NCBI RefSeq assembly: GCF_006345805.1 | Contig: NW_021828255.1 | Coordinates: forward strand, 1-8,870 | Direction of reading: 5' to 3' | Source: Octopus sinensis | Lineage: Eukaryota | Length of the DNA: 8,870 bases | Shown: positions 505 to 8,870 of the stretch, piece by piece | Numbering within the stretch: the first letter of the stretch is position 1 | How the letters are laid out: every line of letters starts with the position of its first letter | Program-made: the position numbers and the translations under genes | The notes under the pieces: generated by a model | What the model saw: only the letters and a program-made list of their open reading frames with translations | Told to the model about the DNA's origin: nothing | Database searches by the model: none

Positions 505-584
505 TTTTATGGTTTTTTTAATAATTGTTTATGTTGTCTTATATTATATTATATTGTATTCATAGTATATTACGTTTTATTATA

Positions 585-761
585 TAGATAGATAGATAGA
601 TAGATATCGATAGATAGATATAGATAGATAGATAGATAGATAGATAGATGGATAGATAACCGACAGACAGATAGACAGACAGACTACACGGACAGACAAC
701 AACAACAGATAGATAGATAGATGATAGATAGATAGATAGATGGATGGATCGATAGATAGTA

Positions 762-827
<66 letters not shown>
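585..827 (+). repeat. (GATA)n microsatellite with a GACA/CAA sub-block
   Basis: Direct reading of tandem GATA units, interrupted by GACA and ACA units at about 660-707. Confidence 0.97.
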
Positions 828-891
828 CGTAGTGAAGTATGGATATATGTAGTGAAGTATTTCTTCAAATATTATAACTGTCTGTGTGTGT

Positions 892-1008
892 AAGAGAGAG
901 GGGGGAGGGAGAGAGAGAGGGAGGGGAGGGGAGGGAGAGGGAGGGAGAGGGAGAGGGAGGGATGGATGGAGGGAGGGAGGGAGGAAGAGAGAGGGAGAGA
1001 GAGAAAGA
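892..1008 (+). repeat. Polypurine (GA/GGGA)n tract
   Basis: Almost pure G/A on the + strand (only two T), with many GGG runs. Confidence 0.9.
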
Positions 1009-1107
1009 CTAATTCCAGTATCTCTTTTTTTTCTACTACGGCGTTGAAGACGAGGTATATGCTATGCCACGACGTATCATAACGAGGCATGATCACAAAA
1101 ATAGTTC

Positions 1108-1240
1108 TACCACAGTCACCACCACTACCACCACCACCACCACCATCATCGTCATCACCACCGCCATCATCTATAATCATTATGCAACTCATCATAGCCA
1201 TAGCTGTCATCGCCGTTAGATCCATCATCATCATCATGAA
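1108..1240 (+). repeat. Degenerate (CAC/CAT)n trinucleotide repeat
   Basis: Runs of CAC, CAT and ATC. These explain the poly-Pro, poly-Gly/Asp and poly-Ile/Met ORF translations. Confidence 0.85.
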
Positions 1241-1292
1241 CGTAACCTTCCTCTTTGTCATTATTTCGATTTCCATTTCTCTCATACAGGCT

Positions 1293-2080
1293 ACATATAT
1301 CATATACCTATATATATATATATATGTATATAATATATATATATATATATATTATATATATCTATATATATGTATGTAATGTATAGTATATATATATATA
1401 TATATGTGTGTGTGTGGTGTATATATATATTAATACCTATATATTATATATATCATAATATATGTATATATATATATATGGGTGTATATATATCTGTGTG
1501 TTATCTATATACTATATATATATATACTATTCTATGTATCTATATCTATGTATATATCAATATATATCTATAATATATATATGTTATTGTATATATAATA
1601 TATTATATGGTATATATATATATATGTATGTATATGTATATGTATATGATATGTATATGTCATATGTATATATATCTATATATGTATATGTATGTTATAT
1701 ATATATATATATGTATATGTATATGTATATATAATGTATATGTCTATGTATATATATATATATATGTATATGTATATGTATATATATACTATATATATAT
1801 GTATATGTTATAATATTATATAATATATATGTATCTATATATATGTACATATACGTATATATATATACATCTATACAATATATATACCATATATATCACA
1901 TATATACATATATATATCTACATACATATATTTATACACACATATATCTATACATATATATATACATACATATATATATATATACATACATATATATATA
2001 TACATGTATGTATGTATGTATGTGTATTTATATATACACACATACACACGCACACACACACCACACACTTTCATATACAC
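1293..2080. repeat. Long compound (TA)n/(TATG)n/(CATA)n/(CA)n low-complexity array
   Basis: About 790 bp of alternating TA with interspersed TG/CA units. Confidence 0.97.
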
Positions 2081-2672
2081 ATGCTAATACAAACATGCAC
2101 GTGTACGCATGCGCTGTGTGTGCAGAGTAATTCCTGCTCGTTCCAAAAGTTGCAACAGGACAGAAGCCATATTTTTCAGAGACGTCACTTACAGCATTTC
2201 AGGATACGCAGAATGTCGCCAATGCGGCAGGCAGAAGGGGAATGCTGGGAATGTTTTCACTTCCGACAAACAGCATTTGACTTCCGGCAGAGCGACAGAG
2301 GGGTAAAGAACGAAATAAAATCGTTGTTTATAATCAAGAAAGTACAAAATTAGATATTTCGATATTTCTATATTACATGTCGACATTTTTAGTGGCAAAT
2401 TTCTTGTTTTCGTTGTATGGAAAACGATCGTTCGCTGTTGGATTGCCTCTGGGTGTACGTATGTGTTTCTACGTATGCATGAATGTACGTATGTATTTAT
2501 TTATGTGAATGTAAGTATGTACATGATTGTATGCAGGCTTGTGTAAGTTAGTATGCGTGTGTGATAATATGTATGTGTGATAAAACTATCGTAAAAAGAT
2601 AAACATGATAAGATAAATTTAGATGGTATAACAGTATAAGAATCTAAAAACGACATAAAAATATATACATAA

Positions 2673-2750
2673 GATAGATCGATAGATAGACAGACAGACG
2701 ACAGACAGGCAGGCAGGCAGGCAGCCAGGTAGGTAGGTAGAAAGAGAGAT

Positions 2751-2817
<67 letters not shown>

Positions 2818-2845
2818 TAAGATAGATAGATAGATAATAGATAGT

Positions 2846-2939
<94 letters not shown>

Positions 2940-2940
2940 T
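2673..2940 (+). repeat. (GATA)n microsatellite with GACA/GGCA/GGTA lead-in
   Basis: Direct reading; nearly pure GATA from about 2750 to 2940. Confidence 0.97.
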
Positions 2941-3100
2941 GTTTCTTTATTGGCTACACAGGGCTGAACACAGAGGGGACAAAATACAATGTAGAACTTT
3001 TCTTTTGGGGAAGAAGAAAATAAGGGGAGGAGGGTAGAATTTCGATCGAAAGGGGTCGTGGGAAAAAAGGCCGATCAATTGGGATCGTGCATCGCAGAAA
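2941..3100 (-). mobile_element. Short retroposon fragment sharing its 3' tail with SINE family A
   Basis: Minus strand ends ...TTTGTCCCCTCTGTGTTCAGCCCTGTGTAGCCAATAAAGAAAC, closely matching the tail of the SINE A copy at 4221-4265 (TTTGTCCCCCTCTGTGTTTAGCCCCTTGTGGGTAATAAAGAAAT). The body (3000-3100) does not align to SINE A by eye. Confidence 0.55.
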
Positions 3101-3180
3101 GACAGACAGACAGACAGACAGACGGGTGGATAGATGGATAGATGGATAGATAGATAGATAGATATATAGATAGATAGATA

Positions 3181-3215
<35 letters not shown>

Positions 3216-3235
3216 TATTAGATAGATAGATAGAT
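3101..3235 (+). repeat. (GACA)n/(GATA)n microsatellite
   Basis: Direct reading. Confidence 0.95.
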
Positions 3236-3271
3236 TCTTGTGTCTCCCATCTTCCGTGTCTGTCATTAATC

Positions 3272-3278
3272 ATATATA

Positions 3279-3339
<61 letters not shown>
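3272..3339. repeat. (TA)n microsatellite
   Basis: Direct reading. Confidence 0.95.
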
Positions 3340-3342
<3 letters not shown>

Positions 3343-3344
<2 letters not shown>

Positions 3345-3552
3345 TACAAATGGGACACGAACGCAAAACATCTGGACAACTAGGTGATACAAAAGGCAGC
3401 CGAAATTGCGAGGATGATCCGGTTCTTGACTGAGGATGGAGAACTTCGAATGATCCGTCCTTGTTTTTTTTTGTATCGACTATCTGGATGTTTTGTTGTC
3501 CCTTTTTGTGTCACCTAGTCGTCCGGATATTTTGCATTCTAGTCCCATTTTG

Positions 3553-3583: not shown

Positions 3584-3837
3584 GCCATCGAGAAAAAGTA
3601 TGACAACGACTCTTACCTATGGAAATTTGTAGAGAAGGACCGTTTCCATACTTTCCACACCAACCTTTCCGACAAATGCTCTCTTAAGTGATCATCTACT
3701 TTTTGTTAAACTTGCAGAATTGTTTCAATAACAACCACGTAATTTTGAACATAATCGCATACATATTTTTTGTCAGCACCCAATACAACATAATTATTAA
3801 AATTCAGTACAGTTATTATATAATTATTTAGTTCACG

Positions 3838-4034
3838 TTTTGCCACAAGGCCAGCAATTTCATGGGAGTGAGTAAGTTGATTACATGGACCCCAGTGTTT
3901 CACTGGTATTTATTTTATCGACCCTGAAAGGATGAAAGGTAAAGTCGGCCTCGGTAGAACTCAGAACATAAATACGGACCAAATTCCGCCGCGCATTTCG
4001 CCCCGCGTGCCAACGATCCTGCTAGTTCGCCGCC
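3838..4034 (-). mobile_element. tRNA-derived SINE family A, diverged near-full-length copy
   Basis: Minus strand starts GGCGGCGAACTAGCAGGATCGTTGGCACG, collinear with the copy at 4221-4451. The B-box is partly deleted. The 3' tail is AAATTGCTGGCCTTGTGGC. Confidence 0.85.
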
Positions 4035-4065
4035 TTATAATAGGATATAATCAGTAATAATCCTT

Positions 4066-4220
4066 TCGGCTATAGGCACAAGGCCTGAAATTTGGTGGGA
4101 GGGGCAGTTGATTAGATCGACCCCAGTATGCAACAGGTACTTAATTGATCGACTCTGAAAGATGAAAGGCAAAGTCGGCCTCGATGGAAGTTAAACTCAG
4201 AAAATAAAGGACGAAATACC
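4066..4220 (-). mobile_element. SINE family A unit lacking the 5' (A-box) part, fused behind the copy at 4221-4451
   Basis: Collinear with the central part of SINE A (GATCGACCCCAG...GAAAGATGAAAGGCAAAGTCGGCCTCG...ACGAAATACC on +). It stops at 4220, where the next copy's tail begins. Its own tail is AAATTTCAGGCCTTGTGCC. Confidence 0.8.
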
Positions 4221-4451
4221 TATTTCTTTATTACCCACAAGGGGCTAAACACAGAGGGGACAAACAAGGACAGACAAACGGATTAAGTCGATTATATCGA
4301 CCCCAGTGCGTAACTGGTACTTATTTAATCGACCCCGAAAGGATGTAAGGCAAAGTCAACCTCGGCGGAATTTGAACTCAGTACGTAGCGGCAGACGAAA
4401 TACTGCTAAACATTTTGCCCGGCGTGCTAACGGTTCTGCCAGCTCGCCGCC
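4221..4451 (-). mobile_element. tRNA-derived SINE family A, full-length copy
   Basis: Minus strand starts GGCGGCGAGC, followed by a pol III A-box-like TGGCAGAACCG (4441-4431) and a B-box-like GAGTTCAAATTCC (4379-4367). It has an internal hairpin GTCGATATAATCGAC and a 3' tail with AATAAAGAAATA. It resembles octopus tRNA-SINEs, but I cannot assign the exact family name. Confidence 0.9.
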
Positions 4452-4577
4452 TCTGAGATCAAATTCCGCAGAGGTCGACTTCACCTTTCATTCTTTCGGG
4501 ATCAATAAAATCGAGAGGGGTCGATGTAATCGACTTACCCTCTCCCTACGAATATGCTGGCCCTGTTCCAAAATTTG
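4452..4577 (+). mobile_element. SINE family A partial copy in the opposite orientation, abutting the 5' end of the previous copy
   Basis: 4453-4500 matches the reverse complement of 4334-4381 at 41/48. It then has GGGGTCGATGTAATCGAC and the tail TATGCTGGCCCTGTTCCAAAATTTG. Confidence 0.85.
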
Positions 4578-4663
4578 TGATCAATAATAGTAAATTATTA
4601 TTATTGTTATTACCACATACTATTATATTAATAAATATATATGTGCAGTCAAAGGTAGTAATA

Positions 4664-4778
4664 TATTATGTCGCACGTTCGGATGCCTTCTACTTAAATC
4701 TGCTCTACTCGGTTTCTTTATTAGCCACAAGGGCCCATGGGCTAGTCTACTTCATCGTCTGGGGGCGTCCACACAACA
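4664..4778 (-). repeat. 3' LTR (115 bp)
   Basis: Minus strand starts TGTTGTGTGGACG and ends CGACATAATA (terminal CA mutated to TA). 4739-4778 matches 5644-5683 at 37/40, and 4685-4710 matches 5580-5605 at 25/26. Confidence 0.85.
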
Positions 4779-4790
4779 CCTTCCCCTTCT
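4779..4790 (-). promoter_or_regulatory. Polypurine tract (PPT)
   Basis: AGAAGGGGAAGG immediately 5' of the TG that starts the 3' LTR on the minus strand. Confidence 0.85.
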
Positions 4791-4818
4791 GAGTTTTTTA
4801 AACCCGAATTTATCAATT

Positions 4819-5000
4819 TTATTTCCTCGGTGAGAAACTGGCATATCTTTTTCTCTTAGCGTTAATTACCATCATTTCTGTAGGTTTTCTCTTCCTGTTC
4901 GACCTACGTATCGGTTCTGCTTTTGCTTGTGGTTCTGGGACCTCGACCAAATCATACCATAAATCCATTGGTTCTTCTGGCCTCTCTTGGTTTTTGATAC
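4819..5000 (-). pseudogene. C-terminal tail of Ty3/gypsy pol (after the integrase core)
   Basis: KNQERPEEPMDLWYDLVEVPEPQAKAEPIRRSNRKRKPTEMMVINAKRKRY..stop. The RRSxRxRKP-type basic motif is typical of gypsy integrase tails, and the stop lies about 30 nt before the PPT. The first ~20 aa of the track ORF 4819..5061 come from the SINE tail. Confidence 0.65.
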
Positions 5001-5432
5001 TCTCTTTACTCTTTACTCTTTTACTTGTTTCAGTTATTTGACTGCGGCCATACTGGAGCACCGCCTTTAATCGAGCAACTCGACCCCGGGACTTATTCTC
5101 TGTAAGCCCAGTACTTATTCTATCGGTCTATTTTGCCGAACCGTTAAGTGACGAGGACGTAAACACACCAGCATCGGTTGTCAAGCAATGCTAGGGGGAC
5201 AAACACAGACACACAAACATACACACCACACACACACACATATGTATATATATACATACGCATATATACGACAGGCTTCTTTCAGTTTCCGTCTACCAAA
5301 TCCACTCACAAGGCATTGGTCGGCCCGGGGCTATAGCAGAAGACACTTGCCCAAGATGCCACGCAATGGGACTGAACCCGGAACCATGTGGTTGGTAAGC
5401 AAGCTACTTACCACACAGCCACTCCTGCGCCT
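5001..5432 (-). mobile_element. tRNA-derived SINE family B, full-length, inside the LTR element
   Basis: Minus strand has GGCGCAGGAG, an A-box-like TGGCTGTGTGG, a B-box-like GGTTCAGTCCC, a CORE-like CTTGGGCAAGT box, a central GTGGATTTGGTAGACGGAAACTGAA, an internal CA/TA microsatellite (about 5203-5268), and a 3' end ...GAAACAAGTAAAAGAGTAAAGAGTAAAGAG. It is homologous to 6352-6680 and 6681-7040. Confidence 0.9.
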
Positions 5433-5542
5433 ACATATCTATATATGTATGCTATATATCTTTTTTGTTGTTGTTTAAATGCCTTCTGCAGTTGCTGCTG
5501 CTGCTCTTGTTGTTTTACAACTGCTTTCAGTAACTCTTTCAT
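5433..5542 (-). pseudogene. gag N-terminal remnant
   Basis: ATG at 5542-5540, 17 nt after the PBS, reads MKELLKAVVKQQEQQQQLQKAFKQQQK... and is then cut by low-complexity sequence and the SINE. It is under 60 aa, so it is absent from the ORF track. Confidence 0.6.
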
Positions 5543-5558
5543 TTCGGTACTATTCGAA

Positions 5559-5569
5559 CCTCGTCGCCA
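5559..5569 (-). promoter_or_regulatory. Primer binding site complementary to the tRNA-Ser(GCU) 3' end
   Basis: TGGCGACGAGG lies 1 nt after the LTR end (...ATAACA). It is complementary to ...CCUCGUCGCCA, the 3' end of metazoan tRNA-Ser(GCU). Confidence 0.85.
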
Positions 5570-5570
5570 C

Positions 5571-5683
5571 TGTTATGTCGCCTTCTACTCAAATCTGCTC
5601 TACTCTTCCCTGTTCCAATCTTCTCCGTCTATATCTACGTTTTGGGATAGTCTACTTTATCGTCTGGGGTCGTCCACACAACA
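5571..5683 (-). repeat. 5' LTR (113 bp)
   Basis: Minus strand reads TGTTGTGTGGACG...GGCGACATAACA, with imperfect terminal inverted repeats TGTTGTGT/ACATAACA. It is homologous to 4664-4778. Confidence 0.85.
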
Positions 5684-6351
5684 TATATATATATATATGT
5701 GTGTGTGGGCGGGGGAGTATGTTCTCTTCTATTTTTAAGTTTTTCAACTCTCCTTACAATAAAGGAGCTAGTTTCTGACCAGGATATAAAACTCCATCGT
5801 TGGAATATAGTTTCTTGCATATTTTTACAATTCCGCTAACAGACTGTATTTCTAAATGTCCGCATTATTTGGTTGATTTCTTTTTCTGAAAACCCTAGCT
5901 TTTCCAGATTGTCACTTAAGTATTTCCTCACAAAATCAAATGCATTGCTTCAAATGTGAACTTACAAAAACGGATGGTTTCAAAGCAGTTGCCCATAGCT
6001 GTTCTCATTGTTCGATTCCCGATGTTTGCTTGCATTCATACATGCAAGTATGTATTGTTGTAAATAAGTGCAGTTTACCATAGCTGTTTTCGAGCCATTA
6101 GACATTAGGACAAGAGTCATGCTAGAAATAACTGGTAGGAGGTTAATGCTCTTTGCTGGTTATCGACCTGTGTCAATTGTTTGCATATTAAAGCTGGATT
6201 ATGTGACAGCATTTCATGTAATAGACGAACGTTTAGCAAATTCTTTTGTGATATCCCATGAATACATACAAATGCTAACTATTTGATAACATATATTGTT
6301 GTATAAGAGTATAATGGGAGAAGCAGAGGTGAAGTTTGATGAAGATCTGTA

Positions 6352-6680
6352 AGACACGAGCATGACTGTGTGGTAGGAAGCTTGCTTCCCAACCACATGG
6401 TTCCAGGTTCAATATTACTGCGTGTCACCTTGGGAAAGACACTTCTACTATAGCCATGAGCCGACTAAAGCCTTGTGAATGGATTTGGTAGACGGAAACT
6501 GAAAAAAAAATAACACATCGCATGTGTGTGTTAGTGTTTTTGTGTCTGTTTGTTGCCCAACACCGCTTGACAACCGGTGAGGGCGTATTTACGTCCCCAT
6601 AACATAACGGTTCAACAAAAAAAGGACAAAGAGGAGCGTTACCAGGTTTAAAAATATAAGACTCTGCAAGGCGGTGCCCC
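6352..6680 (+). mobile_element. SINE family B, diverged, 3'-truncated
   Basis: Contains CTGTGTGGTAGGAAGCTTGCTTCCCAACCACATGGTTCCAGGTTCAA, CCTTGGGAAAGACACTTCT and TGGATTTGGTAGACGGAAACTGAA. It ends at GGCGGTGCCCC, short of the tail seen in the copy at 5001-5432. Confidence 0.85.
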
Positions 6681-6843
6681 GGTACTTATTTTAAGCTTGT
6701 TAATATTCTATCGGTCTCTTTTGCCGAACAGCTCTGTTGTCAAGCAGTGGTGGGAGACCATCACAGACACAAAGACACATACACACATATATATACACAC
6801 ACATACATACATACATACATACATACATACATACATACATACA

Positions 6844-6875
<32 letters not shown>

Positions 6876-7040
6876 ACGGATGGCTATTTTCAGTTTCCGT
6901 CTAAGAGATCCACTCATAAGGATCTCGTGGGCCCGAGGCTATAGTAGAAGATACTTGCCCAAGATACCATGCAATGGGACTGAACTCGGAACCATGTGAT
7001 TTAGGAGCGAGCTTCTTACCACACAACCGCACCTGCGTCC
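6681..7040 (-). mobile_element. SINE family B, 3'-truncated, with expanded internal (CATA)n and a ~29-nt internal deletion
   Basis: Minus strand starts GGACGCAGGTGCGGTTGTGTGGTAAGAAG...GAGTTCAGTCCC and is collinear with 5085-5432. About 18 CATA units lie at about 6801-6872. Confidence 0.85.
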
Positions 7041-7050
7041 ATATATGTGT

Positions 7051-7069
7051 AGATAGATGGATAGATAGG

Positions 7070-7145
<76 letters not shown>

Positions 7146-7188
7146 TAGATAGATAGATAGATAGATAGATAGATGATAGATAGATAGA
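7051..7188 (+). repeat. (GACA)n/(GATA)n microsatellite
   Basis: Direct reading. Confidence 0.95.
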
Positions 7189-7977
7189 GGTACATATATA
7201 TGTATGTAGATATTGTATATGCATACTTTTACCTAACCCTATCTCATAAATCGTTTTACTATTTCTCGCTACATGGCATTCACCGAAACAGACCTAACAG
7301 GCGTCTTAGCGCCAAATCCTGCTACAGTTATTGATTAATAACTGAAAACAAAATGGCCGCCGACGGTTTAGCTTGACGTCTTTTTCCCATATGCCACTAT
7401 CGATTAAAAGGATTCGATTCTGTCATTAATGGTGCTGAATTAGTATTTTTTGTGGTCTTTGGCCGGAACTTGGACAGCTGTCTAAACTACTTTCCATGTA
7501 TGAGACTAAAAATACTTTTTGTTTGCGTTATATGGATCTAATTTTAGTAATATATCCGAAAACGGTGATGTTACTAGAAAGGATAAATATACTAAATATA
7601 CAATATACGTCAGCTGTATGTATTTATGGATTTGTTCTGGATATACCTCACTGTCAAAGTGATCTGGGTGTCTTACATTAGAATGTTTTGATCTTACATT
7701 CTTTACTGAATCAGAAAGTATCAGGCGTTATTTTTTTTCTTCCTTTTTGTTAGAAGTTTATTGTGTAAGAATTATGGCTTAAACTCGTTATAAGACTCTG
7801 CTATGTATATGTTACAACTATTAAGACAAGTCATACGACTGTTGTATAAGGATTAAAACGTTTGAAGCAACCGAGAAGGCTGAAAGCATGTAGTGTCTCA
7901 TTGTTTTTCACAAATGGATGCTATCGCACCTGGGTGAGAGACATGAAAAATCTTATATATATATTTTGGGGACAAAG

Positions 7978-8870
7978 GAGGCACGTTTTGAGAGTCCCAA
8001 CTTCATCCTGGCACATTTTGAGAGTCCCAACTCCATCTTAATATCACTGGAGAAAATCCGCACAGACTGGACTAGGCTGTCCAGTTCTGCCTCAGTTTTT
8101 GTGAATAGATTCAGTTCGGCCATGAATAGCGAGTGGTTCAGTTTACCCTTACCACTTCCCAGACCATACCCCAACTTTGTTTTCTGCAGTATTTCACTCA
8201 AGGGGATGATCCTCAGCACGAATATTAGTGGGGGGGACACCGTTCCCCTGAAAGATTCCTCTCTTGATTTTCACCTCTCCTAGTACTTGCTTCCCTGCTG
8301 TCCATCCCGTTCCCCAGTATTTCATGCTATTCCATATAAGGCTTCTCATAATCTCTGCTACTCTATACATTTCCATCGTTCGTATTATCCAGGAGTGTGA
8401 TGTCATATCGTATGCTTTGCGATAGTCAACCCATGCCGTGCTCAGGATGTATGTCTTCTCTTGCAGTTCCTGATAATTAGATTATCAATTAAGAGCTGAT
8501 CCCTCGTTCCCCGGCTCCTTTTTCAGCACCCTTTATGTTCAATATGTAGAAGCCCACTTTTCTCCAAATATCTGTACAGTTTACCGGCCAAAGCACCTAA
8601 CATTAATTTCCACATTAGCGGAAGGCATATTATTGGTCTAAAGTTGGATGCCACATTTCACTTTTCAGGATCCTTGGCACATAACAATGTCTTTCCTTTT
8701 GTCATCCAACTGGGTACTATACCTTCCTGCAAGCACTCATCTAGCTGTTGTGCTATCCCTTCATGGGGCCCTCTCAGCTTCTTCATTCAAAACCCTTGGA
8801 CCCCATCCGGGGGAATTTTATTGACTGCTTTTTTTATCATTTCTGAAGTTATCTTTGTTTCCTTCGACTT
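7978..8870 (-). mobile_element. Decayed non-LTR retrotransposon reverse transcriptase fragment, R4/Dong-like; continues beyond the window
   Basis: Manual minus-strand translation from 8870: ...PDGVQGF*MKKL...VPSWMTKGKTLLCAKDP...NFRPIICLPLMWKL...KGC*KRSRGTRDQLLID...[fs]AWVDYRKAYDMTSHSWI...KRGIFQG[fs]SPPLIFVL...NHSLFMAELNLFTKTEAEL...MELGLSKCA. These are collinear RT motifs of the R4/Dong type. In-frame stops occur at 8787-8789, 8658-8660 and 8523-8525, with frameshifts near 8445 and 8240. Confidence 0.9.
7980..8037. repeat. 30-nt-period tandem duplication at the LINE breakpoint
   Basis: GGCACGTTTTGAGAGTCCCAACTTCATC (7980-8007) versus GGCACATTTTGAGAGTCCCAACTCCATC (8010-8037): 26/28 identical. 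Confidence 0.9.

What the first reader, a model, noticed from the sequence alone, without database searches (positions are those of the whole stretch)
4664..5683. Miniature (TRIM-sized) Ty3/gypsy element keeping every cis signal but only the two tips of gag-pol
Seen on the minus strand: 5' LTR (113 bp, TGTTGTGT...ACATAACA), G, PBS TGGCGACGAGG, ATG plus a Gln-rich peptide, a SINE, an integrase-tail peptide with RRSNRKRKP, a stop, PPT AGAAGGGGAAGG, and the 3' LTR (115 bp). Excluding the SINE, the element is 588 bp with only 360 bp of internal sequence. Flanks AATA (4660-4663) and TATA (5684-5687) could be a 4-bp TSD with one mismatch. Established: a tRNA-Ser PBS and Gln-rich gag starts are seen in Mag-group gypsy elements, and TRIMs are well known in plants but sparsely reported in animals. 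Inference: this is either a one-off deletion derivative or a member of a non-autonomous mini-LTR family mobilised in trans. It is invisible in the ORF track.
Basis: partly seen in the sequence, partly recalled or inferred. Interest (0 to 1): 0.8.

Follow-up and report, generated by a model that had tools for sequence, protein, structure and literature searches.

The report
Gutted, dead Ty3/gypsy retrotransposon copy
This is a roughly 570-bp wreck of a Ty3/gypsy LTR retrotransposon that kept its ends, its tRNA-Ser primer site and the last ~75 codons of pol and was later hit by two SINE insertions; it is an ordinary kind of genomic fossil, and nothing here shows it belongs to a mobile miniature (TRIM) family.

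Summary
On the minus strand, 5683..4664 carries two terminal direct repeats (113 and 115 nt, TG..CA and TG..TA). An 11-nt PBS, exactly complementary to the 3' end of tRNA-Ser(GCT), starts 1 nt after the 5' repeat. A PPT abuts the 3' repeat, and a nested SINE sits inside.

The pol-tail reading is supported. The internal sequence aligns with the stretch just after the integrase domain, through the stop and PPT to the LTR start, in degenerate Ty3/gypsy elements from other assemblies. One of these relatives has the same PBS and a similar leader.

Three corrections:
1. The last ~12 residues of the "Gln-rich gag start" are in fact the end of pol. The remaining 19 codons resemble a relative's Gln-rich gag N-terminus in composition only (shuffle p 0.4).
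2. The LTRs are 63% identical overall. The centre of the 3' LTR is the last ~23 nt of a second SINE family, so its AATAAA is foreign.
3. The 4-bp TSD (3 of 4 matching, inside a TA microsatellite) is uninformative.

The TRIM-family idea could not be tested, because the source genome is in none of the searchable collections. The best reading is an old, dead, internally deleted copy. Interest is low.

The parts
5571..5683 (-). 5' LTR, 113 nt, TGTTGTGT...ACATAACA (TG..CA)
   Evidence: Direct repeat of 4664-4778. Its first ~10 nt resemble the LTR start of relative L001 (TGTTGTATGGA).
5559..5569 (-). Primer binding site TGGCGACGAGG, 1 nt (G, 5570) after the LTR. It is complementary to the last 11 nt of tRNA-Ser(GCT).
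   Evidence: tRNA sequence from PMC10359600. Relative L005 has TGGCGACGAGGGATTCGAAAAGGAC after its 5' LTR.
5490..5558 (-). Short 5' internal segment: 16 nt of leader (TTCGAATAGTACCGAA), then ATG (5542) plus 17 codons and 2 nt of the next, MKELLKAVVKQQEQQQQL(Q). Possibly the gag start; origin unresolved.
   Evidence: The leader resembles L005 just after its PBS. There is no significant similarity to the integrase region of relatives and no order-specific similarity to the L005 gag N-terminus.
5455..5489 (-). Remnant of the end of the integrase C-terminal block (QKAFKQQQKRY, matching KRHFNQLKKRY). The deletion junction lies at or just upstream of 5489.
   Evidence: aligns with L001 1192-1227 at 81%, colinear with and adjoining the main match. 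Searches give the protein alignment.
5003..5454 (-). Nested insertion: ~20 nt of TA-rich filler plus a SINE (head GGCGCAGGAGTGGCTGTGTGG at 5433, internal TG microsatellite, GTAAAGA-type tail). Same orientation as the element. No recognisable TSD.
   Evidence: copies at 6882-7059 and 6363-6507. Boundaries come from the break in colinearity with L001. TSD search.
4819..5002 (-). Pol C-terminal tail remnant ...KNQERPEEPMDLWYDLVEVPEPQAKAEPIRRSNRKRKPTEMMVINAKRKRYASFSPRK, then TAA (4821..4819)
   Evidence: the only true hit among 1.8e9 representatives is P0001 at 59% identity.. dN/dS against L001 is 1.08.
4779..4790 (-). Polypurine tract AGAAGGGGAAGG abutting the 3' LTR
   Evidence: Relatives carry ctcAGGGGAAGG or ctcGGGGGAAGG at the same place.
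4664..4778 (-). 3' LTR, 115 nt, TGTTGTGT...ACATAATA; a composite (see next part)
4711..4737 (-). Foreign patch in the 3' LTR: the last ~23 nt of a second SINE family (sense GGCCCTTGTGGCTAATAAAGAAA). It replaces the ~38-nt LTR centre.
   Evidence: 20/21 match to 4223-4243, E 9e-6. (3 matches against 0 expected). One search shows a full copy ending ...GCCCCTTGTGGGTAATAAAGAAA at 4223.
4660..4663 (.). 3' flank AATA, a candidate TSD half; its partner is TATA at 5684-5687
   Evidence: Matches 3 of 4; the partner lies in a (TA)n run, so this is not informative.

Best explanation
This is an old, inactive, internally deleted copy of a Ty3/gypsy LTR retrotransposon from a lineage with short LTRs and a tRNA-Ser(GCT) primer site, which is Mag-like by those traits.

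What is left:
- both LTRs;
- the PBS;
- about 70 nt of 5' leader or possible gag start;
- the last ~75 codons of pol, downstream of the integrase domain;
- the stop, a short 3' UTR and the PPT.

Everything between (gag, protease, RT, RNase H, most of integrase) is gone. It was lost through one deletion, or through a template switch during reverse transcription.

Two retroposition events came later. A ~430-bp SINE landed in the pol tail. A heavily 5'-truncated copy of a second SINE replaced the centre of the 3' LTR.

Shown: the cis elements, their order, the homology to the pol tail, and the two secondary insertions.

Inferred: that the LTRs were once identical; that the deletion was a single event; and that the copy is dead now. 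It has no coding capacity, one LTR is damaged, and the tail has evolved neutrally. If it ever moved as a miniature, it did so the standard way: tRNA-Ser primes minus-strand synthesis at the PBS, the strand transfers through R, the PPT primes the plus strand, and a partner's integrase acts on the TG..CA ends.
For: - Repeats, PBS and PPT sit in canonical order and spacing.
- The PBS equals the complement of the tRNA-Ser-GCT 3' end.
- Window 5015..4768 aligns with L001 1213..1455 (77%, E 2e-48), running through the tail, stop and PPT into the LTR start. Window 5489..5455 aligns with L001 1192..1227.
- L001 carries an RVT_1 remnant (E 5e-10).
- L002, L003 and L005 carry PR, RVT_1, RT_RNaseH, Integrase_H2C2 and rve ORFs, followed by the same tail motifs and PPT.
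- L005 shows the same PBS plus the TTCGAA leader.
- dN/dS of the tail against L001 is 1.08, with differences spread 9/7/10 over the codon positions.
- SINE nesting. SINE-B patch in the 3' LTR.
- The alignable LTR blocks differ at 5 of 78 sites. With the rate implied by PMC13282606 (JC 0.12 = 33 My), this gives very roughly 9 My, if the host is an octopus.
Against: - No convincing TSD.
- The relatives' LTRs are not alignable with these beyond about 10 nt.
- No relative from the same genome was available, so the parent element and the exact deletion junction are not defined.
- Clade membership (Mag) was not tested by phylogeny.
- One copy alone cannot show whether the deletion preceded or followed integration.
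Confidence: 0.7

Rival explanations
1. It is a member of a TRIM-like non-autonomous family. The miniature, with this same leader-to-pol-tail junction, was itself transcribed, packaged and reverse-transcribed in trans by an autonomous Mag-like partner, and exists in several or many copies in this genome.
For: - LTRs, PBS and PPT are all present at TRIM size, under 1 kb.
- Once the SINE is removed, the ATG frame and the pol-tail frame are the same frame by homology to L001. That gives a ~88-codon open frame.
- TRIMs exist in molluscs (PMC6934838; PMC10886601).
- Deleted derivatives are often mobilised in trans (general knowledge).
Against: - No second copy was found. phmmer of the tail against 1.8e9 representatives gave only P0001, from a different, RT-bearing element. 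The word search found nothing. DNA patterns found nothing in viral or metagenome contigs.
- These negatives are weak, because the source genome is not in those collections.
- The leader is only 16 nt before the ATG, against about 390 nt in L005, so a packaging signal is doubtful.
- LTR elements are a small fraction of octopus repeats (PMC13282606).
Confidence: 0.2
2. It is a recombinant between two different elements. The 5' LTR and 3' LTR come from separate copies or subfamilies joined by ectopic recombination, which would explain the dissimilar LTR centres and the missing TSD.
For: - Overall LTR identity is only 63%, with a non-homologous centre and a 12-nt indel.
- The TSD is imperfect.
Against: - The non-homologous centre of the 3' LTR is accounted for by a fragment of a SINE family present elsewhere in the window.
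- Outside it, the blocks are 93-96% identical, as expected for one ageing LTR pair.
Confidence: 0.07
3. It is not a retroelement. The two ~113-nt repeats are a local duplication or two copies of an unrelated short repeat, and the PBS- and PPT-like strings are coincidence.
For: The window is extremely repeat-rich, and the LTRs have no match in any relative beyond about 10 nt.
Against: - An 11-nt exact tRNA-Ser complement sits 1 nt after the repeat.
- A purine tract abuts the other repeat.
- The interior is homologous to pol tail, stop, PPT and LTR start of RT- and IN-bearing elements.
- A relative has the same PBS and leader.
Confidence: 0.03

Closest known systems
Mag-lineage Ty3/gypsy LTR retrotransposons (Mag, SURL, and the A/B/C clades abundant in molluscs)
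   Same: - PBS complementary to tRNA-Ser.
- Short LTRs. In Culex, Mag-like elements have 119-304 bp LTRs and Ser or Leu PBS (PMC3286476).
- The lineage is abundant in molluscs (PMC6238403).
- The nearest named RT relatives of the sister element L001 are Octopus bimaculoides 'K02A2.6-like' proteins.
- Relative L005 has tandem repeats in its 5' UTR, as some Culex Mag elements do.
   Different: - This copy has no gag, PR, RT, RNase H or integrase core.
- Clade assignment was not tested by phylogeny.
- Mag-like elements in Culex mostly make 5-bp TSDs; here only a 4-bp match of 3 in 4 is seen.
TRIMs (terminal-repeat retrotransposons in miniature), including biv-TRIM of bivalves and Helenus of molluscs, fish and wasps
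   Same: Under 1 kb; terminal direct repeats of 100-250 bp; the internal domain starts with a PBS and ends with a PPT; no enzymes encoded (definition in PMC6934838, and PMC10886601).
   Different: - TRIMs are defined as families of many copies; here there is one copy.
- The interior is a still-recognisable coding remnant of pol (59% aa identity to a relative), so this looks like a deletion derivative rather than an old non-coding TRIM lineage.
- There is no small-RNA-like promoter in the LTRs, unlike Helenus.
- biv-TRIM lacks a canonical PBS; this element has one.
Ordinary internally deleted (non-autonomous) LTR retrotransposon copies, including LARD-type derivatives
   Same: LTR-PBS...PPT-LTR with the coding interior lost; nested later insertions; diverged LTRs.
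   Different: The deletion is unusually extreme: only about 340 bp of interior remain.

Membership tests
LTR retrotransposon (structural definition) | Two terminal direct repeats ending TG...CA | tested here: met
   5' LTR is TG..CA; 3' LTR is TG..TA (one transition).. The centres differ because of a SINE-B patch.
LTR retrotransposon (structural definition) | tRNA-complementary PBS within a few nt of the 5' LTR | tested here: met
   TGGCGACGAGG lies 1 nt after the LTR and is the complement of the tRNA-Ser-GCT 3' end. The octopus tRNA itself was not checked.
LTR retrotransposon (structural definition) | Polypurine tract abutting the 3' LTR | tested here: met
   AGAAGGGGAAGG at 4790..4779. Conserved as GGGGAAGG in relatives L002 and L003.
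LTR retrotransposon (structural definition) | Target-site duplication of 4-6 bp | tested here: inconclusive
   TATA vs TATT (3 of 4) next to a (TA)n run; 5-bp flanks match at 2 of 5.
Ty3/gypsy (Metaviridae-type) descent | Interior homologous to a pol with the order PR-RT-RNaseH-IN | tested here: met
   The tail is homologous to the segment after rve and the integrase C-terminus in L002, L003 and L005, and after the RVT_1 remnant in L001. PF17917 and PF17919 are present in these relatives.
Mag lineage | RT/IN phylogenetic placement within the Mag A/B/C clades | not tested
   This copy has no RT, and no reference set was available. Only indirect traits (Ser PBS, short LTR) agree.
TRIM | Size under 1 kb, terminal repeats of about 100-250 bp, PBS and PPT, no protein-coding capacity for transposition | tested here: met
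   About 570 bp without the SINE block; LTRs of 113 and 115 nt; no enzyme domains.
TRIM | A family: multiple dispersed copies sharing the same internal domain, each with its own TSD | not testable with these tools
   The source genome is absent from the searchable collections. No other copy was found in the protein, viral or metagenome searches.
TRIM | Evidence of mobilisation in trans (polymorphic or young insertions, identical LTRs) | tested here: not met
   The LTR blocks are 6.4% diverged, one LTR is disrupted, and the interior is disrupted by a SINE.
Helenus/TRIMp3 | tRNA- or 5S-like pol III promoter inside the LTRs | tested here: not met
   [quoted passage not shown] The only tRNA-like string is the PBS with TTCGAA, which lies outside the LTR.

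The most novel reading that the evidence does not exclude
The miniature is one copy of a cephalopod TRIM-like family. Its RNA is LTR-PBS, a 16-nt leader, and a small in-frame ORF fusing a Gln-rich N-terminus to the basic (RKRK) tail of pol. An autonomous Mag-like element with the same tRNA-Ser PBS would mobilise it in trans. This would be the first TRIM described in cephalopods, with its partner lineage identifiable.
Probability: 0.15. Interest if true: 0.45.

Novelty: new member of a known kind. Interest (0 to 1): 0.22.

Why it matters
Its value is mainly for annotation. It shows that short LTR-PBS-PPT-LTR skeletons derived from Mag-like elements exist in this repeat-dense, octopus-like genome, where ORF- or domain-based screens miss them. 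It also shows that abundant SINEs overwrite parts of such elements, which can mislead LTR-identity dating and motif calls: the apparent poly(A) signal in the 3' LTR is SINE-derived. If further copies with the same junction exist, it would extend TRIM-type elements to cephalopods. That would be a modest addition, since TRIMs are already documented in bivalves and other animals.

Tried and rejected
- **Pfam on both peptides and on the SINE-free fused ORF:** nothing meaningful.
- **Word-indexed protein search with the tail:** no candidates. With P0001 as query it found only itself.
- **DNA patterns:** LTR head and tail patterns found nothing in viral contigs or metagenome contigs.
- **Exact look-ups of ten window ORFs:** none on record, so the window's genome is not in the collection and copy number cannot be judged.
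- **Extending the pol homology upstream of 5489 towards the ATG:** 38-40% ungapped identity against a 26-27% null, p about 0.06, so not accepted.
- **Homology of the 19-codon N-terminus to the L005 gag N-terminus:** compositional only, p 0.39-0.46.
- **Aligning the window LTRs to the relatives' LTRs** to decide which centre is ancestral: not significant. The question was settled instead by finding the SINE-B fragment.
- **TSD of the nested SINE:** none recognisable.
- **LTR pairs in L002-L004:** none found, because the elements are truncated or degenerate.
- **Searching papers for the SINE sequence** to name the organism: no hit. The Octopus assignment therefore rests on my recollection of this SINE and on the O. 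bimaculoides RT relatives.
- **Rfam microRNA matches at 1600-2100:** microsatellite artefacts far below gathering scores.

Full report
**1. What is in the sequence**

Read on the minus strand, 5683..4664 has the following order:
- a 113-nt repeat, TGTTGTGT...ACATAACA (5683..5571);
- a single G (5570);
- TGGCGACGAGG (5569..5559);
- 16 nt of leader;
- an ATG at 5542 that opens MKELLKAVVKQQEQQQQLQKAFKQQQKRYI...;
- a SINE whose head begins at 5433;
- a frame reading ...KNQERPEEPMDLWYDLVEVPEPQAKAEPIRRSNRKRKPTEMMVINAKRKRYASFSPRK, ending at TAA 4821..4819;
- 28 nt of 3' UTR;
- AGAAGGGGAAGG (4790..4779);
- a 115-nt repeat, TGTTGTGT...ACATAATA (4778..4664).

A 25-nt probe from the repeat head and a 26-nt probe from the second conserved block each occur exactly twice in the window. 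None is expected in 200 dinucleotide shuffles. The PBS string occurs once, against 0.04 expected even with one mismatch. It is the exact reverse complement of the last 11 nt, CCTCGTCGCCA, of tRNA-Ser-GCT as printed in PMC10359600. The nested SINE is a real repeat family, with two more copies at 6882-7059 and 6363-6507.

**2. The LTRs are less alike than implied, and why**

A global alignment gives 63% identity. The parts compare as follows:

| Part of the LTR | Comparison |
|---|---|
| First 41 nt | 38/41 identical |
| Centre | 38 nt (5' LTR) vs 28 nt (3' LTR), not homologous |
| 26-nt block | 25/26 identical |
| Extra segment | 12 nt, ATCCGAACGTGC, in the 3' LTR only |
| Last 11 nt | 10/11 identical |

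The centre of the 3' LTR (plus strand 4713-4735, TTTCTTTATTAGCCACAAGGGCC) matches the ends of a second SINE-like repeat at 2942-2964 and 4223-4245. That is three matches against none expected, and 20/21 identity to the 4223 copy.

A full copy of this second SINE lies just downstream of the element. Read on the minus strand, it has a B-box-like GAGTTCAAATTCCGCC and ends ...GCCCCTTGTGGGTAATAAAGAAA at 4223. The patch in the 3' LTR is therefore the last ~23 nt of that SINE, in sense orientation. This is what a severely 5'-truncated retroposition with loss of target sequence would leave.

Two consequences follow:
- The two repeats can be read as one ageing LTR pair: 5 differences in 78 alignable sites, with one LTR damaged.
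- The AATAAA in the 3' LTR is not an LTR signal.

**3. The interior**

A phmmer search with the 60-aa tail against 1.84 billion representatives gave one true hit, P0001. It is 49 aa long and 59% identical. The second hit is an unrelated repeat protein.

P0001 sits on a 2.3-kb Logan contig, L001. L001 is a degenerate retroelement with:
- an RVT_1 remnant (E 5e-10);
- an integrase C-terminal block, ...VVYMIKGQKYERKRHFNQLKKRY;
- the tail, then a stop;
- a purine tract and TGTTGTATGGA.

BLASTN gives two colinear matches:
- window 5015..4768 with L001 1213..1455, at 77% and E 2e-48, running from the tail into the first 10 nt of the LTR;
- window 5489..5455 with L001 1192..1227, at 81%.

So the SINE block (about 5454..5003) split a continuous pol-end sequence. 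The last dozen residues of the supposed gag peptide (QKAFKQQQKRY) are the pol motif KRHFNQLKKRY.

Using the L001 RT and IN-tail as a composite query found RT fragments. These include Octopus bimaculoides 'K02A2.6-like' proteins and four loci in ENA assembly ERZ21867824. These loci carry PR, RVT_1, RT_RNaseH, Integrase_H2C2 and rve ORFs. I examined them piece by piece.

Their pol ends ...KRHINQLR..YIETIQNNEEIPMEVLYDSFQI...SSRKRKRTKH..LNPKRKKY*. It is followed by ctc(A/G)GGGGAAGG and an LTR start TGATATA... The chain of similarity is window to L001 at E 1e-21, then L001 to L002, L003 and L005 at E 3e-12 to 5e-9. This establishes the window's tail as the segment of a Ty3/gypsy pol that follows the integrase domain.

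Between the window and L001, the tail differs evenly over codon positions (9/7/10), and dN/dS is 1.08. The peptide has therefore drifted neutrally.

**4. The 5' side**

L005 keeps a 5' LTR end followed by TGGCGACGAGGGATTCGAAAAGGAC; this unit is tandemly triplicated. That is the same PBS as in the window, and the leader start is similar (window: TGGCGACGAGGTTCGAATAGTAC).

The L005 gag ORF contains DUF7083 (E 5e-18) and begins MELTKMLGVAVQQLQQFVQQQENFQKQQ.... A Gln-rich gag N-terminus is therefore real in this lineage.

However, the window's 19 to 29 N-terminal residues score no better against it than their own shuffles do (p 0.39-0.46). The ATG also lies 16 nt after the PBS, against about 390 nt in L005.

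Homology of 5570..5490 to the integrase region upstream of the junction is not significant either.

The gag tip is thus plausible by position and composition, but it is not shown. The deletion junction lies at or just upstream of 5489.

**5. TSD, age and state**

The flanks match at 3 of 4 positions (TATA vs TATT on the minus strand). One lies in a (TA)n run, and the 5-bp flanks match at 2 of 5, so this says nothing. In Culex, Mag-like elements mostly make 5-bp TSDs.

The alignable LTR blocks differ by 6.4%. The calibration in PMC13282606 is JC 0.12 for about 33 My. If that rate applies, this is of the order of 10 My, which is a rough inference.

The copy encodes nothing useful, is interrupted twice, and is best regarded as dead.

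**6. Family or one-off?**

None of ten window ORFs is on record in the protein and contig collection. So failing to find other copies does not bear on copy number in the source genome. I also found no positive evidence for a family. I put 0.2 on the TRIM-like family reading and about 0.7 on a one-off or low-copy deletion derivative.

**7. Comparison with what is known**

Structurally the element meets the size and cis-element definition of a TRIM (PMC6934838, PMC10886601). It fails, or cannot be tested on, the features that make TRIMs a family. Its still-recognisable pol remnant points to a deletion derivative.

A Ser PBS and short LTRs agree with the Mag lineage (PMC3286476), which is abundant in molluscs (PMC6238403). 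Membership was not tested phylogenetically.

TRIMs are already documented in bivalves, cestodes, hymenopterans and, as Helenus, in molluscs and fish.

**8. Verdict**

The TRIM idea is untested.

This is an ordinary genomic fossil, a new member of a known kind, and of low interest. The organism was not identified with tools. The SINEs look like octopus SINEs from my memory, and the closest named RT relatives are from O. bimaculoides.

Noticed in passing
window 4713-4735 (within the 3' LTR): The centre of the 3' LTR is the last ~23 nt of a second SINE family, sense GGCCCTTGTGGCTAATAAAGAAA. It replaces about 38 nt of LTR, so the apparent AATAAA poly(A) signal is foreign.
   Followed up: yes
window ~3800-4590 and 2942-3100: A cluster of copies of a second SINE-like repeat ('SINE B'). 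A full copy lies on the minus strand at ~4470..4223, with a B-box-like GAGTTCAAATTCCGCC and the end ...TAATAAAGAAA. Bodies lie at 3870-3959, 4101-4190 and 4281-4370, and another end at 2942-2983. The miniature element sits directly beside this cluster.
   Followed up: partly
window ~7900-8870, minus strand: A degenerate non-LTR (LINE-type) reverse transcriptase remnant with stops and frameshifts. ORF 7956-8240 gives a weak RVT_1 match (E 0.0016). It is unrelated to the LTR element.
   Followed up: partly
window 5543-5569 (minus) and L005 7612-7760: In both the window and relative L005, the tRNA-Ser PBS is followed by TTCGAA.AG.AC. This looks like the tRNA T-arm complement with about 6 nt missing. 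In L005 the PBS-leader unit is tandemly triplicated, recalling the 5'-UTR tandem repeats reported for some Mag-like elements.
   Followed up: partly
window 5003-5542 (minus), conceptual: By homology to L001, the ATG frame before the SINE and the pol-tail frame after it are the same frame. Before the SINE arrived, the miniature would have carried an open ~88-codon fusion ORF. At this divergence that is compatible with chance (roughly 0.3).
   Followed up: partly
window 560-3350, 6740-7210: Very dense (GATA)n, (GACA)n, (TA)n and (TG/TATG)n microsatellites. The Rfam microRNA matches at 1600-2100 (mir-3149, mir-297, mir-466 and others) are all far below their gathering scores and fall in these tracts.
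   Followed up: yes
L001 (Logan SRR11869384 contig, 2302 bp): The sister element is itself internally deleted: the RT remnant joins almost directly to the integrase C-terminus. Its LTR matches the window's only in the first ~10-13 nt, even though the interior is 77-81% identical. The organism is unknown.
   Followed up: partly
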